From contig NW_027271590.1 in NCBI RefSeq assembly GCF_040938485.1, positions 496,001-560,000 on the forward strand: 64,000 nucleotides of DNA. The letters run 5' to 3'. The notes below the pieces were generated by a model, which was not told the origin of the DNA, made no database searches, and saw only the letters and a program-made list of their open reading frames with translations. Shown here in pieces: positions 53,709 through 58,499 of this stretch. Each line of letters begins with the position of its first letter. Within the stretch, counting starts at the first letter, position 1. The DNA is from Diadema antillarum (taxonomy: Eukaryota). A program made the translations under genes and the position numbers.

Positions 53709-55257
53709 TTAATGCTTTAAAAATAATCAAATCATTAATTAGATGGAAGAGATGGCACTTTAAAAAAATGACTTTTGTAATTCTTCTGTCCTAATGTACA
53801 ATGTACATACAGGGTACAGTTTTGTCTGTGTATTGTAACATGAGTGAGTTGATGATATAATACCCTCACAACTTTTTGTGTATTCAATTAAAACTTGTAC
53901 ATCTACAAATGAAAGTCAGAAAATGTGTTATTTTTAGCTAACAAGTAAAAGCTAGTTCCCCTACCAAGATATATCAGAGTTAACATTTGCTCTTTTTTAT
54001 TTTGGGTGATTTTAAGACAAGTTTTATATTACACAGCTGAAATACGAAATTTTTGTCATTTCTGTAATCATATGAAATGAATAAGAAATTGTGAGAACAT
54101 GACATCGACAACTTGCTGATTTGAAGACTCACAGGGACTGGTCAAGAAATGTGTTAAGAAAAAATGTGAAATGTCAAAATGTCCTATCTTCTATTTTCCT
54201 ATCTTCCATTTATTTTTGTTTTTGTCATTTTTGCAATGTTCTGTAGGGAATATTTTTCTCTTTCATTTGAAATTCATTTTTTGGGTGGATTTCATCTTTA
54301 ATCATTATAGATAATGAATGATATCGATAAAAACAATAAAGACAAAAATGAAAATGAAGATGATAATAATCACCATAATAGTCATGAAATATATCTGCAC
54401 TTCTGTAATCCATGGAAGGTAGCCTCTGCAGTCATATCAATAGAGCTCTGCCATAGAGAGCCCTACCGTACAACGTACCAAAGTACCCTACAAACTGGTT
54501 TAAGAGAGACATTGTGAGCCAGACTTCTTGTCCTGGAAGGATGAATACAACACCAGCCTCACACATGTTTTGAAATCAGTACCTTCTGTATAAAAGTCTT
54601 ACAATAGTACCCATTACCTAAAAGTCTTACAAATAAAACAACACAAACTCTTTAAAAGTATTCAAAATTTCAAGTTGACATCGTCTTCAGCAGTTTTTGC
54701 TTGTTTGCTGTACAATTTGCGTTGCTTATTTCTTTTTACATTTAGTTTTACCTGTCCACATAACCTCAACTGGATGAACAGATACCCTCTTTTATACAGA
54801 CTGTATCACCAAGTGCTCTCTTTTCAAATGGTGGTTGGACTTGAATAGTCTTTATCTAACTTGATTGCCAGCCTTTTATATCAACTTTAAAAAAAAAAAA
54901 AAAATCAATTTTTTAGAGGTATCTGGTGGTAGATCACATTTGTACACAGCTCAGCAGTACCGGTACTCAAAAAATCTGCATCAAGTAGGACCTAACCATT
55001 CAGAATGCATTCCATGCAAATTTCAATTATGTGTCACTGTCTGCTTTTGTACATTTTTTTTTTTTAAGTTGTAGACATGATGGTTCTCACTAGATCTTTC
55101 ATAATATTCAGTCATCTACATGTACTCTTCTGAAGGCAGAAAGGTGCAAATTTACAACAAGACTAGACATCTATTTTTAAGTGGCTCGTAATTTTGTGGG
55201 TTTACATGATTAATACATCATACTGTGATGTGAGATGTGATGAGATAGGGCATGGCC

Positions 55258-56026
55258 TAACTGCGACCAGCCCCAACACGCAGTGTTGGGGCTGCGCATT
55301 GTAGCAGACATGATCATGACAGGCGAAGTGTAGCGCCTAAAAATCAATATGAAATCGCAAAAATTCTGCAATATGAAGACTTACAGGTGAAGATGTAATG
55401 TTGAAGACTGACTGCGTTCAACTTTTGGTTCTGGCAATAGTCCCTTTCTGCTCGGTTTGATGAGTTAAATGCGACTCGGTCGAGAGGAACTCGGGAGAAC
55501 TACATCTTATACGGTCAATGGATTTGAGATTTGTGCGCATGCGCTGGCCGTCAAGTCGTGTAGCTTTGTGGCAAGGCTTTATCATACTGTTGGCAAACCC
55601 TCTCGCTGTATATTGAGTTGCTTTCTGGGTGGGTGCGCGCGCGCAGGCCTTGTCAGAAGGCTAAACGCATTGCGACTCCGCCGGCACATGAATATTTACG
55701 TGCGCAGTGTACTGCATACTGATTTCGAAAATGGTGAATGGGATGGGGAGCTAGGACTACGGACCCGTATATGGCCGTGAAAAAAACGTTTTTTCAAGAT
55801 CATTGGACCAGTGTGAACAAGAACAAGGTGAACGAAGGGTATTAATTAGATAAGAATCTTATGTATACTATAAAAGTACGTTTTTTCCTCGTGATATTCG
55901 AAACTTACGGAGGTGCGAAAATCTGTGACAGACTGTGTATGTTTTTCAAGCTTACCGATATAGCACTCTATTGACTCAGGACGCTCCCACAGTGTGTAAC
56001 TGTGTATACGGAGCGTCCCGGGGTTA
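55258..56026. mobile_element. 769-bp non-autonomous element with 9-bp TSD and subterminal hairpins (MULE-like by TSD length; unclassified)
   Basis: Perfect flanking direct repeat ggcatggcc at 55249-55257 and 56027-56035. Termini TAAC...GTTA. Hairpins at 55268-55294 and 55979-56018. Confidence 0.8.
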
Positions 56027-56155
56027 GGCATGGCCATGGTGAAAAGAATTTAATGCTAGCCTAACGTTTCAGGTAACATGAATAGCACCAGTACGACGCT
56101 GATGAAAATTTGGTTTTGTAAACTACACTGTAAAGTGTAACATCATGCAGAAAAT

Positions 56156-56191
56156 TAACTGCGACCAGCCCCAAGGAGCGTCCTGGGGTTA
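56156..56191. mobile_element. 36-bp mini-derivative of the 55258-56026 element
   Basis: Consists of the first 19 nt and last 17 nt (one substitution) of the larger element. Flanked by gcagaaaat (56147-56155) and gtagaaaat (56192-56200). Confidence 0.8.
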
Positions 56192-56629
56192 GTAGAAAAT
56201 CAGCAACAAACAACACCATACATTTCAAAAGACACAAGGTTATAAATATCGCCTTTGACGCCGCAGTTCCCATGTTTCCAGTTGATACCCCTACCATGCT
56301 TTATTTGTACACTGTCACTGTGTAAAGATTGTAGGTTGTACCCATCGTAGAATCTAGAACTATGTTGAATTGTTCTGTCTTGATGCCCAACATTACGTCA
56401 GTCGCCCATAGCCAAGCACAGGCAGCGCAGTGCGGTGGAATGCACGGCGCATAAAGACATACTGTACAGTCGGATCCTACAGCATGCAGCAGCAGCAATC
56501 CGCCAGCAGGTCTGGCCACCGTTGCGTTAGATACAGATAAACTCGATTATTTTGAACAGCATATGTGGATAATACGTGGGATAACAAGTGCGGTGTAATA
56601 CAGTGTAATACAGAAAATCATTGACTTAC

Positions 56630-56900: not shown

Positions 56901-57139
56901 AAAGGCATAAAAAGTAGGCCTGCTACTATAGTTAGTAGTAGTTGTGGCAAAGTATTTATTTTATGATCTGACCAAGTTAGCTTATACGAGATGATTCATA
57001 TACTCAGTATTCTCCTCTAATAATATTCAGATCAAAGAGATCACAAAGATTTTCTTCGCAGCTGTGTCAAATAGGATAATGATATAATAATAATATAATA
57101 ATGTATTAGCTTAGGATCTGCACAAACAATGCGTCATAA

Positions 57140-57330
57140 TGATAATAATAGTATAAACGACGACGATGATGGTGATCATGATGATGATCATGATGATGAT
57201 AGTGATAATAATAATGATAATAATAATAATAATGATAAAGCAATAAGAATAAGAAGAAGAATATGAATAAGAATAATGAGAATGATACTTATTTTCATAA
57301 GTATTATCTGTTTTATTTTGTCTATATTAA
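57140..57330. repeat. ATA/ATG/AAG trinucleotide low-complexity tract
   Basis: Directly visible. Confidence 0.9.
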
Positions 57331-57795
57331 TCATCATCCGATCATCATTGTAGTCATCATCTTGGTGCTTGGCTGTCGTATTTTCAAGTTCTAAATGACA
57401 AGAAGCCAAGTCAGACACAATTAACGATCATAACGGTTGGGATTATAGGTAGAAAGGAGGGCATGTTTAATATAAAAAAAACTTGACCTCGGGAAATATT
57501 GTTCCATCAATGATTACTCAAATGACTCATTATAAATCTTGTGGTTGTTTAAGAAAGTTGTGTATATCATTATGACTTTTGAAGATTACATAGGCTTAGT
57601 GAAGAAAATTGAGATTGAATATAGATTTTGGATTTAGCGGTTAAAACCTATCTCGTGTCAAAGACACCTTTATCATAATTAAAATTATAACTTAAATGCT
57701 CTATCAAATCGGTATGATTGTGCTGCTGAGGAAGTTGAGTCAGTTGTCAGCGTGTAAGGCAAATGACACATGATTGTGATACGCAATGAAGGTTA

Positions 57796-57860
57796 TTCAT
57801 TCATTCATTCATTCATTCATTCATTCATTCATTCACTCATTCATTCATTCATTCATTCAT
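57796..57860. repeat. (ATTC)n microsatellite
   Basis: Directly visible. Confidence 0.95.
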
Positions 57861-58499
57861 TCATTCGTTCGTTCATTCATTCCCTGAAAGCTGAGCATGT
57901 CTCATCTATATAACATGTATTAGGTGGTATTATAAATTGATATGCGGTAATACATTATTTTTTCAATGTATAGCTGACTGAGTTGTAATTGTTTTCTGAA
58001 AATACATTGTAAGTGAAACTTCAAAATTATAGAGCATTATGATTAAGGATCGTCCGATACGAATAAAATCGTTTTTCATATGTGCGGCAGTATTCTGTTA
58101 TCAATGTCGAAGTGAAAGATACACATAATATTTTTATGATTATATTAGAGTTCCGGGCTGAAGTGCGACCAGGACATAATCTGCGTTTATGTTGTTAACG
58201 GAGGAGCATTAAGGAATGAGTCGCGCCGCTGGTTGAGTGTCTTGATATTTGGATTGAGATATTGCTGGAAATTGAGCAAGAAGCCTGTGTTAATGTGAAT
58301 TTGGTTGAGATGGGACTTCAGGTTTCCAACTTTATCTTTTAGATAACGAGAAACCTTTTGTGAAATATAAAAGAGCGTATATGTATATGATATTCTAAGA
58401 GAAATGCAAAGTATTATCATGGTTGTGAAATGCTAAGATATCTAAAACGATGTGATCCTAATAAAAGGTGGTAGGCCTACCCAACTTTTTTTTTCCGAA

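What the first reader, a model, noticed from the sequence alone, without database searches (positions are those of the whole stretch)
56147..56200. 36-bp 'ends-only' element with its own 9-bp target-site duplication
Seen: taactgcgaccagccccaaggagcgtcctggggtta (56156-56191) is the left 19 nt fused to the right 17 nt of the 769-bp element 130 bp away. It is flanked by gcagaaaat/gtagaaaat, a different 9-mer from the parent's TSD, so it marks an independent insertion event. The fusion removes everything between the outer arms of the two parental hairpins. It creates a new stem (cccc-a-agga / tcct-gggg), and the one substitution relative to the parent improves that pairing. Inference: either a mobile unit of only 36 bp that defines the minimal cis ends of this family, or a full insertion whose interior was later removed at the hairpins. 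Either would be unusual, and repeat finders would miss it.
Basis: partly seen in the sequence, partly recalled or inferred. Interest (0 to 1): 0.8.

Follow-up and report, generated by a model that had tools for sequence, protein, structure and literature searches.

The report
Excision scar of a hairpin-ended transposon
The 36-bp unit is real, but it is best read as the scar left when a 769-bp DNA transposon lost its interior, one of at least about 100 such two-ends-only remnants in this genome, and not a 36-bp element that moves by itself.

Summary
Window 56156-56191 is the first 19 nt joined to the last 17 nt of the 769-bp element at 55258-56026. It has one CpG-to-TpG change and its own 9-bp duplication (8/9 match).

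The "mobile 36-bp unit" reading is not supported. The "interior removed at the hairpins" reading is supported.
- The genome holds about 205 full-length-type left ends and about 180 pattern hits to ends-only units of 23-145 nt, roughly 100 independent.
- Nearly all fetched units have their own clean 9-bp duplication.
- Junctions differ almost everywhere: 0-6 nt microhomology, 1-9 nt filler, and recurrent snap-back copying of the left hairpin.
- Unit lengths climb to about 80 nt and then stop. No unit keeps more than 37-38 nt of the left end or 44-46 nt of the right end, which are the inner edges of the two hairpins.
- The only high-copy mini (66 nt) always sits in the same larger repeat, so it is a hitchhiker.

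The anatomy matches P-element excision footprints (duplication, end stub, microhomology or insert, end stub, duplication). The family also re-uses its duplications as targets, because its TAAC/GTTA tips rebuild a palindromic target motif.

The transposase partner and superfamily remain unidentified. First-reader notes of this scan title similar footprints on other DNA of this genome.

The parts
56147..56155 (+). Left copy of the 9-bp target-site duplication of the mini unit (GCAGAAAAT)
   Evidence: matches 56192-56200 at 8 of 9 positions.
56156..56174 (+). Left-end stub: element positions 1-19, ending inside the 5' arm of the left hairpin
   Evidence: 19/19 identical to 55258-55276.
56175..56191 (+). 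Right-end stub: the last 17 nt of the element, starting at the 3' arm of the right hairpin, with C to T at 56184 (CpG)
   Evidence: 16/17 identical to 56010-56026. Junction has no microhomology and no filler.
56192..56200 (+). Right copy of the 9-bp duplication (GTAGAAAAT; mismatch at 56193)
55249..55257 (+). Left 9-bp duplication of the neighbouring full-length copy (GGCATGGCC)
   Evidence: perfect match to 56027-56035.
55258..56026 (+). Full-length 769-bp non-autonomous element with no long ORF; a young family with TAAC...GTTA tips
   Evidence: 40 scored copies at 99-100% identity; all 30 fetched copies have clean 9-bp duplications; 205 intact left 44-mers genome-wide.
55268..55294 (+). Left subterminal hairpin (12-bp perfect stem, 3-nt loop; element positions 11-37). 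Its inner edge is the limit of left-end retention in all remnants examined
   Evidence: -17.7 kcal/mol, z = -6.6; no unit keeps more than position 37-38.
55979..56018 (+). Right subterminal hairpin (9-bp outer stem plus 6-bp inner stem). Right-end retention never exceeds 44-46 nt
   Evidence: -15.3 kcal/mol, z = -5.3..
56027..56035 (+). Right 9-bp duplication of the full-length copy

Best explanation
A full-length member of the 769-bp family once inserted at GCAGAAAAT and made the usual 9-bp duplication. The element was later cut out by its still unidentified transposase. The two broken ends kept single-stranded tails of element sequence no longer than the subterminal hairpins: at most 37-38 nt on the left and 44-46 nt on the right. 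The tails were trimmed and joined by error-prone end joining, which left 19 + 17 nt between the intact duplications. The unit is therefore an excision or internal-deletion scar, not a transposon in its own right.

Shown: the anatomy, the genome-wide class of such scars, the variable junctions, the hard length limit, snap-back synthesis, and re-use of duplications as targets. Inferred: that a transposase made the breaks, and where the tails came from. They could be repair synthesis copied from the sister chromatid that collapses once the hairpin can fold, or a long staggered cut.
For: - Both ends are in the correct order and orientation with their own 9-bp duplication.
- Ends-only units by total length: 25-55 nt, 15 hits; 56-85 nt, 146 hits (about a third belong to one hitchhiking 66-mer); 86-115 nt, 4 hits; 116-145 nt, 2 hits. 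Looser anchors find units down to 23 nt. About 205 full-length-type left ends exist.
- Of the 45 units scored for flanks, 33 have perfect and 7 have one-mismatch duplications, at different sites.
- Junctions are almost all different, with 0-6 nt microhomology or 1-9 nt filler.
- At least four units (L080, L081, C589, C1382; the two fetched have different duplications) extend the left hairpin by copying their own 5' arm (GTCGCA/G after position 37). This is the cis-templated 'snap-back' signature of polymerase-theta-type joining (PMC2895639, PMC4912351).
- The layout duplication / end stub / microhomology or insert / end stub / duplication is the layout tabulated for P-element excision products in PMC2895639.
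- The locus is not a fresh insertion. The same unit is in contigs of two further samples of the same organism and in one of a second labelled organism. A 43-nt junction variant sits on contig C102 of the same assembly.
Against: - No allele with a full-length copy or an empty site at this exact position was seen in the runs examined or in the assembly, so past occupancy is inferred, not observed.
- The transposase and the cut-and-paste nature of the family are not established: no autonomous copy was found.
- The same 19|17 junction exists at one other locus (C144), which a mobile 36-mer would also explain.
- Ordinary aborted repair synthesis in flies gives a broad size range. Here intermediate sizes are almost absent, so the simple textbook version needs a hairpin-specific addition.
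Confidence: 0.75

Rival explanations
1. Deletion in place without any transposase. The two very stable hairpins are extruded during replication and are cut or skipped, and the 690 bp between them is lost.
For: Both breakpoints lie inside the hairpins in every unit examined. The hairpins are very stable. Fillers and microhomology would arise from any double-strand break.
Against: Two simultaneous breaks 700 bp apart are needed. A single hairpin break with resection should give many one-sided deletions of intermediate length, but only 6 hits fall in 86-145 nt, and the four fetched 86-115-nt units are long through filler rather than extra retained sequence. There is no long homology between the two hairpins to drive slippage. 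Paired cuts at both ends are what a synapsed transposase does.
Confidence: 0.12
2. The 36-bp unit (or minis in general) is itself mobilised by the family's transposase, so it defines the minimal cis ends.
For: It keeps both tips and has its own 9-bp duplication. The identical junction occurs at a second locus with a different duplication (C144). A 60-mer with one junction occurs at 6 or more places, and the three fetched (one with an extra G) have different duplications.
Against: There are only two independent 36-mer loci, and they share no private substitution. With about 100 junctions over a few hundred possible breakpoint pairs, coincidences are expected. The 60-mer joins at the longest available microhomology (CAGTGT), so recurrent formation explains it. 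The one truly multi-copy mini (66 nt) always has the same flank GGCTAAGCC and lies in a 700-860-bp repeat that is 95-99% identical between copies. Most minis are unique sequences.
Confidence: 0.06
3. Truncation at the time of insertion. Only the two tips of a donor were integrated, for example after the excised intermediate broke, so the site never held a full copy.
For: This gives the same end product. It cannot be told apart from excision scars by sequence alone.
Against: There is no known precedent at this frequency (about one mini per two full copies). Snap-back extension of a free 3' tail and the tandem structures duplication|mini|duplication|element|duplication fit repair at a donor site better.
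Confidence: 0.05

Closest known systems
P-element excision footprints (Drosophila)
   Same: The scar has the form duplication + stub of left end + microhomology or templated insert + stub of right end + duplication. Retention piles up near a fixed maximum. Joining is of the polymerase-theta type (PMC2895639, PMC7776569). A palindromic target motif is restored by the element's own tips, and second insertions sit exactly one duplication length away, as in singed-weak (PMC2577343).
   Different: The duplication is 9 bp, not 8. There is no 31-bp terminal inverted repeat, only TAAC/GTTA plus unrelated hairpins. Maximum retention is 37-38 and 44-46 nt instead of 17 and 17. No THAP/P-type transposase has been linked to the family.
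Abortive gap repair / microhomology-mediated miniaturisation of DNA transposons (origin of MITEs; Ac/Ds, Mu, Tc1, Ozma-Gnome)
   Same: Internal deletion keeps both ends. Junctions carry microhomology, inserts and template switches (PMC3814204).
   Different: Products there span a broad size range and some then amplify. Here the products are almost all 80 nt or shorter, bounded by the hairpins, and none is shown to amplify on its own.
Mutator-like elements lacking long terminal repeats (9-bp duplication)
   Same: 9-bp duplication, negligible terminal inverted repeat, many non-autonomous copies. Comparison from general knowledge, not tested here.
   Different: No MULE transposase is linked to these ends. 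Mutator-type cleavage is thought to hairpin the flanks and would not by itself leave element tails.

Membership tests
Excision / internal-deletion scar of a DNA transposon | Both termini of a known element, in order and orientation, with nothing else between them | tested here: met
   19 + 17 nt, no filler.
Excision / internal-deletion scar of a DNA transposon | Flanked by a duplication of the family's length at a site of its own | tested here: met
   9 bp, 8/9 match, different from the neighbour's duplication.
Excision / internal-deletion scar of a DNA transposon | Junctions differ between loci and carry end-joining marks | tested here: met
Excision / internal-deletion scar of a DNA transposon | Same site occupied by a full-length copy in another haplotype or relative | tested here: inconclusive
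   only the 36-nt and 43-nt scar alleles were seen. No full or empty allele was found, and only 4 runs were laid.
Excision / internal-deletion scar of a DNA transposon | Family moves by cut-and-paste with an identified transposase | not testable with these tools
The one P-like ORF fetched (L082) lacks the family's ends.
Self-mobile miniature element (MITE-like) | Many near-identical copies at independent sites with different duplications | tested here: not met
   36-mer: two independent loci. 66-mer: all copies share one flank and a host repeat.
P superfamily | 8-bp duplication and terminal inverted repeats of a dozen or more bp | tested here: not met
   9 bp. The inverted repeat is only TAAC/GTTA.
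P superfamily | Encoded or partnered THAP / P-type transposase | not tested
   The genome has 18 PF12017 hits, but none could be tied to these ends.
Mutator superfamily | 9-11-bp duplication | tested here: met
Mutator superfamily | MULE transposase partner with matching ends | not tested
   22 PF10551 hits. Their flanks could not be fetched.

The most novel reading that the evidence does not exclude
The family's transposase cuts the non-transferred strand deep inside the element, about 37 nt in on the left and 44-46 nt in on the right, at the inner edge of each subterminal hairpin. This would be a P-element-like staggered cleavage, but more than twice as long and set by hairpins. Every excision would then leave hairpin-forming 3' tails that are trimmed and joined. 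That would explain the hard upper limit, the pile-up of scars just below it, and the recurrent snap-back products.
Probability: 0.2. Interest if true: 0.7.

Novelty: new member of a known kind. Interest (0 to 1): 0.35.

Why it matters
For annotation, these 23-88-nt units are transposon scars and should not be called a new micro-transposon.

For biology, the family offers a natural catalogue of about 100 young repair junctions from one defined pair of ends. The catalogue shows a sharp hairpin-set limit and repeated snap-back synthesis. This makes two questions directly testable: where this transposase cuts, and how stable hairpins steer break repair.

The target-motif mimicry by the element tips extends an observation so far made mainly for the P element.

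Tried and rejected
- 66-mer as proof of a mobile mini: rejected. All copies examined share the flank GGCTAAGCC and a 700-860-bp host repeat.
- New stem in the 36-mer as a selected structure: rejected. z = -1.65, and the change is a CpG transition.
- Empty site in the assembly: none found with 3 or fewer mismatches.
- Full or empty alleles in reads: none in 4 runs. Only a 7-nt junction variant appeared.
- Autonomous partner: P-type and MULE domains exist in the genome, but loci could not be cut out. The one region fetched (L082, 974-aa P-like ORF) has no family termini. ORFs in the 81 loci gave only a TRIM-like host gene and a piggyBac-type fragment.
- Window ORFs: no Pfam hit.
- Literature search for the terminal 10-mer: primers only.
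- 'Local hop from the mini site to the neighbouring full copy': weakened. The mini carries 2 changes in 54 nt while the neighbour matches other copies exactly over 769 nt. Contig C102, which carries the 43-nt allele, shows no intact full-length left end in the contig-ordered listing.
- The organism was not identified.

Full report
**Observation**

The window sequence shows a 769-bp element at 55258-56026 with a perfect 9-bp duplication, GGCATGGCC. A 36-bp unit lies 129 bp downstream at 56156-56191. The unit is element positions 1-19 joined directly to the last 17 nt. The single difference is C to T at 56184, in a CpG. The flanks GCAGAAAAT and GTAGAAAAT match at 8 of 9 positions. Each end is found only twice in the window, against about 0.02-0.03 expected by chance.

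**The parent family**

The window is contig C702 of a 1.75-Gb assembly of 2963 contigs.
- The 769-bp query gave 1233 first-look candidates. The 40 that were scored are 99-100% identical full-length copies.
- All 30 fetched copies have sharp TAACTGCG...GGGGTTA boundaries and 9-bp duplications.
- An intact left 44-mer (2 or fewer mismatches) occurs 205 times.
- The ends are not inverted repeats beyond TAAC/GTTA. Each carries a very stable hairpin: left, element positions 11-37, -17.7 kcal/mol, z = -6.6; right, -15.3 kcal/mol, z = -5.3.
- The element has no long ORF.

**Is the 36-mer a mobile unit?**

The exact 36-mer is unique. With 3 mismatches it recurs only on C144, twice. Those two copies lie in a 96.8%-identical segmental duplication, so they count as one locus. 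That locus has its own imperfect duplication after three extra bases.

I then searched for any unit with a left anchor, a gap and a right anchor:
- 15 hits of 25-55 nt total
- 146 hits of 56-85 nt
- 4 hits of 86-115 nt
- 2 hits of 116-145 nt
- looser anchors add units of 23, 24, 26, 35, 40, 43 and 44 nt

Of the 45 units scored for flanks among the fetched loci, 33 have perfect and 7 have one-mismatch 9-bp duplications, at different sites. Junctions are almost all different, with 0-6 nt microhomology or 1-9 nt of filler.

One sequence is abundant: a 66-mer that makes up about a third of the listed 56-85-nt hits. Nearly every copy fetched has the flank GGCTAAGCC on at least one side (both sides in most), and all lie in a 700-860-bp repeat that is 95-99% identical between copies. 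It was multiplied as a passenger, not by its own transposition.

A 60-mer recurs at several places. The three fetched (one carrying an extra G) have different duplications. It joins at CAGTGT, the longest microhomology the two ends share, so repeated independent formation is the simpler reading.

Several short units occur on two contigs with identical sequence, probably haplotigs. The count of independent events is therefore roughly 100.

**The hard limit**

In the fetched units and the printed matches I read, no unit keeps more than position 37-38 of the left end or more than 44-46 nt of the right end. These limits are the inner edges of the two hairpins. The four fetched units of 86-115 nt are long because of filler, not because they retain more of the element.

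At least four units (L080, L081, C589, C1382; the two fetched, L080 and L081, have different duplications) continue after position 37 with GTCGCA(G). That is the complement of positions 10-4, so the 3' tail folded on its own hairpin and was extended. L078 and L079 carry other templated duplications.

Lengths rise from 23 to a broad mode near 60-75 nt and stop at about 80 nt. There are thus two classes, full-length copies and hairpin-bounded stubs, with almost nothing between.

**Mechanism**

This is the anatomy of transposon excision followed by end joining.
- For the P element, transposase leaves 17-nt 3' tails of element sequence on the donor flanks.
- The recovered products there read duplication, up to 17 nt of the left end, microhomology or templated insert, up to 17 nt of the right end, duplication.
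- Joining depends largely on polymerase theta, and aborted repair synthesis followed by joining is also common (PMC2895639; PMC7776569).
- Internal deletion by abortive gap repair plus microhomology-mediated joining is the accepted route to short derivatives of Ac, P, Tc1 and Mutator (PMC3814204).

I therefore read the 36-mer as such a scar (confidence 0.75). What is not settled is the source of the tails. One option is repair synthesis from the sister copy that collapses once the new strand can fold into the hairpin. The other is a long staggered cut at the hairpins' inner edge. The near-absence of intermediate sizes and the pile-up just under the limit fit a fixed tail length, as for P. The hairpin-collapse version cannot be excluded from sequence alone. 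I give the long-stagger version about 0.2.

**Age and alleles**

- Contigs from two further samples of the same organism and one contig from a second labelled organism cover the unit. The contig from the second organism begins a few bases before the unit, so its left flank is unknown.
- One sample shows a 43-nt version, with 7 nt inserted after 56170 and G to A at 56180. The identical 43-mer lies at C102:174178-174220 of this assembly. C102 is probably the other haplotype or a close paralogue.
- Both versions share the T at the CpG.
- No empty site exists in the assembly, and no full-length allele was seen.
- C102 shows no intact full-length left end in the contig-ordered listing. The neighbouring 769-bp copy matches other copies exactly.
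- The scar is therefore older than its neighbour, and a simple "hop from 56156 to 55258" is unlikely.

**Target choice and clustering**

Sixty-four reconstructed empty sites give a palindromic motif, G-Y-A-N-[9 bp]-N-W-R-C. The first duplicated base is rarely T and the last is rarely A. The element tips TAAC and GTTA supply the outer triplets, so each copy of the duplication remains a good target after insertion.

Consistent with this, a genome-wide search for any two family ends facing each other within 0-30 bp found three loci, all spaced exactly 9 bp.
- L050 reads duplication | mini | duplication | full copy | duplication, with GTCTATAAT three times, head to head.
- L071 is tail to tail in telomere-like repeats, with more family members stacked beside it.
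- L045 has two different-subfamily minis in tandem that share GTTTCATCC three times.

The same logic was described for the P element: a 14-bp palindromic motif restored by the last three bases of the repeats, and second insertions 8 bp apart, as in singed-weak (PMC2577343).

Minis also lie near full or related copies more often than chance would give: 129 bp here, 178 bp on C427, and others.

**What it is not shown to be**

The superfamily is open. A 9-bp duplication fits Mutator or Merlin. The one P-like ORF fetched has no family ends.

**Verdict**

The feature is real and correctly described. It is ordinary in kind, a transposon excision or internal-deletion scar. It is not a 36-bp mobile element.

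The genome-wide pattern behind it is a modestly interesting lead for transposon and repair specialists: a hairpin-set retention limit, snap-back junctions, and tip-restored targets.

First-reader notes of this scan title similar footprints on other DNA of this genome (s1-423895, s1-211335, s1-215326). I did not test those.

Noticed in passing
L053, L056, L060, L063, L065, L066, L069, L072, L073, L077 (about positions 1100-1975 of each locus): A 700-860-bp repeat family, 95-99% identical between copies, carries a 66-nt scar of the 769-bp family at a fixed internal site (flank GGCTAAGCC). One old insertion-plus-excision event was later multiplied dozens of times as a passenger.
   Followed up: partly
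L071:700-2250 (G000:C99, about 2.97 Mb): Telomere-like (TTAGGG)n tract holding a stack of family members: a full copy, a 67-nt mini, a roughly 430-bp relative with ...GGGGCTA ends, and a 57-nt mini of that relative, each separated by GGGTTAGGG or GGGTTAACC.
   Followed up: partly
L045:1452-1557 (minus strand as read): Two scars of different subfamilies (48 nt and 64 nt; the second starts TAACTACGACCAGC and ends GTGAGTTA) lie in tandem, with GTTTCATCC present three times.
   Followed up: yes
G000:C102:174178-174220: A 43-nt variant of the window's 36-mer (extra CCAAGGG, G to A) on another contig of the same assembly. Many other minis and full copies also appear twice on different contigs with identical flanks (for example L023/L029, L051/L052, L066/L077), so the assembly seems to hold haplotigs or recent segmental duplications.
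   Followed up: partly
G000:C1138:25815-25851: Third locus with two family ends exactly 9 bp apart (right end, GGGCGGATC, left end; head to tail). Whether the partners are minis or full copies is unknown.
   Followed up: no
L082:3128-6052 (G000:C284): Uninterrupted 974-aa ORF containing a P-element transposase domain (PF12017 hit at 84 bits) without the termini studied here. It could be an active P-like element of another family or a domesticated THAP9-like gene.
   Followed up: partly
L078:1-744 (minus strand): Fragment of a piggyBac-type transposase (PF13843, E = 2e-28) about 750 bp from an 88-nt scar.
   Followed up: no
L051:2-1153 (minus strand): Single-exon RING plus B-box (TRIM-like) ORF of 384 aa, 350 bp from a 74-nt scar. 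The locus is duplicated in inverted orientation on the same contig (L052).
   Followed up: no
window 57060-57300 and 57779-57890: Dense AT-rich trinucleotide (ATGATA-type) and ATTC tetranucleotide microsatellites just downstream of the finding.
   Followed up: no
window 17769-19148 (minus strand): 459-aa open frame with no Pfam match.
   Followed up: partly
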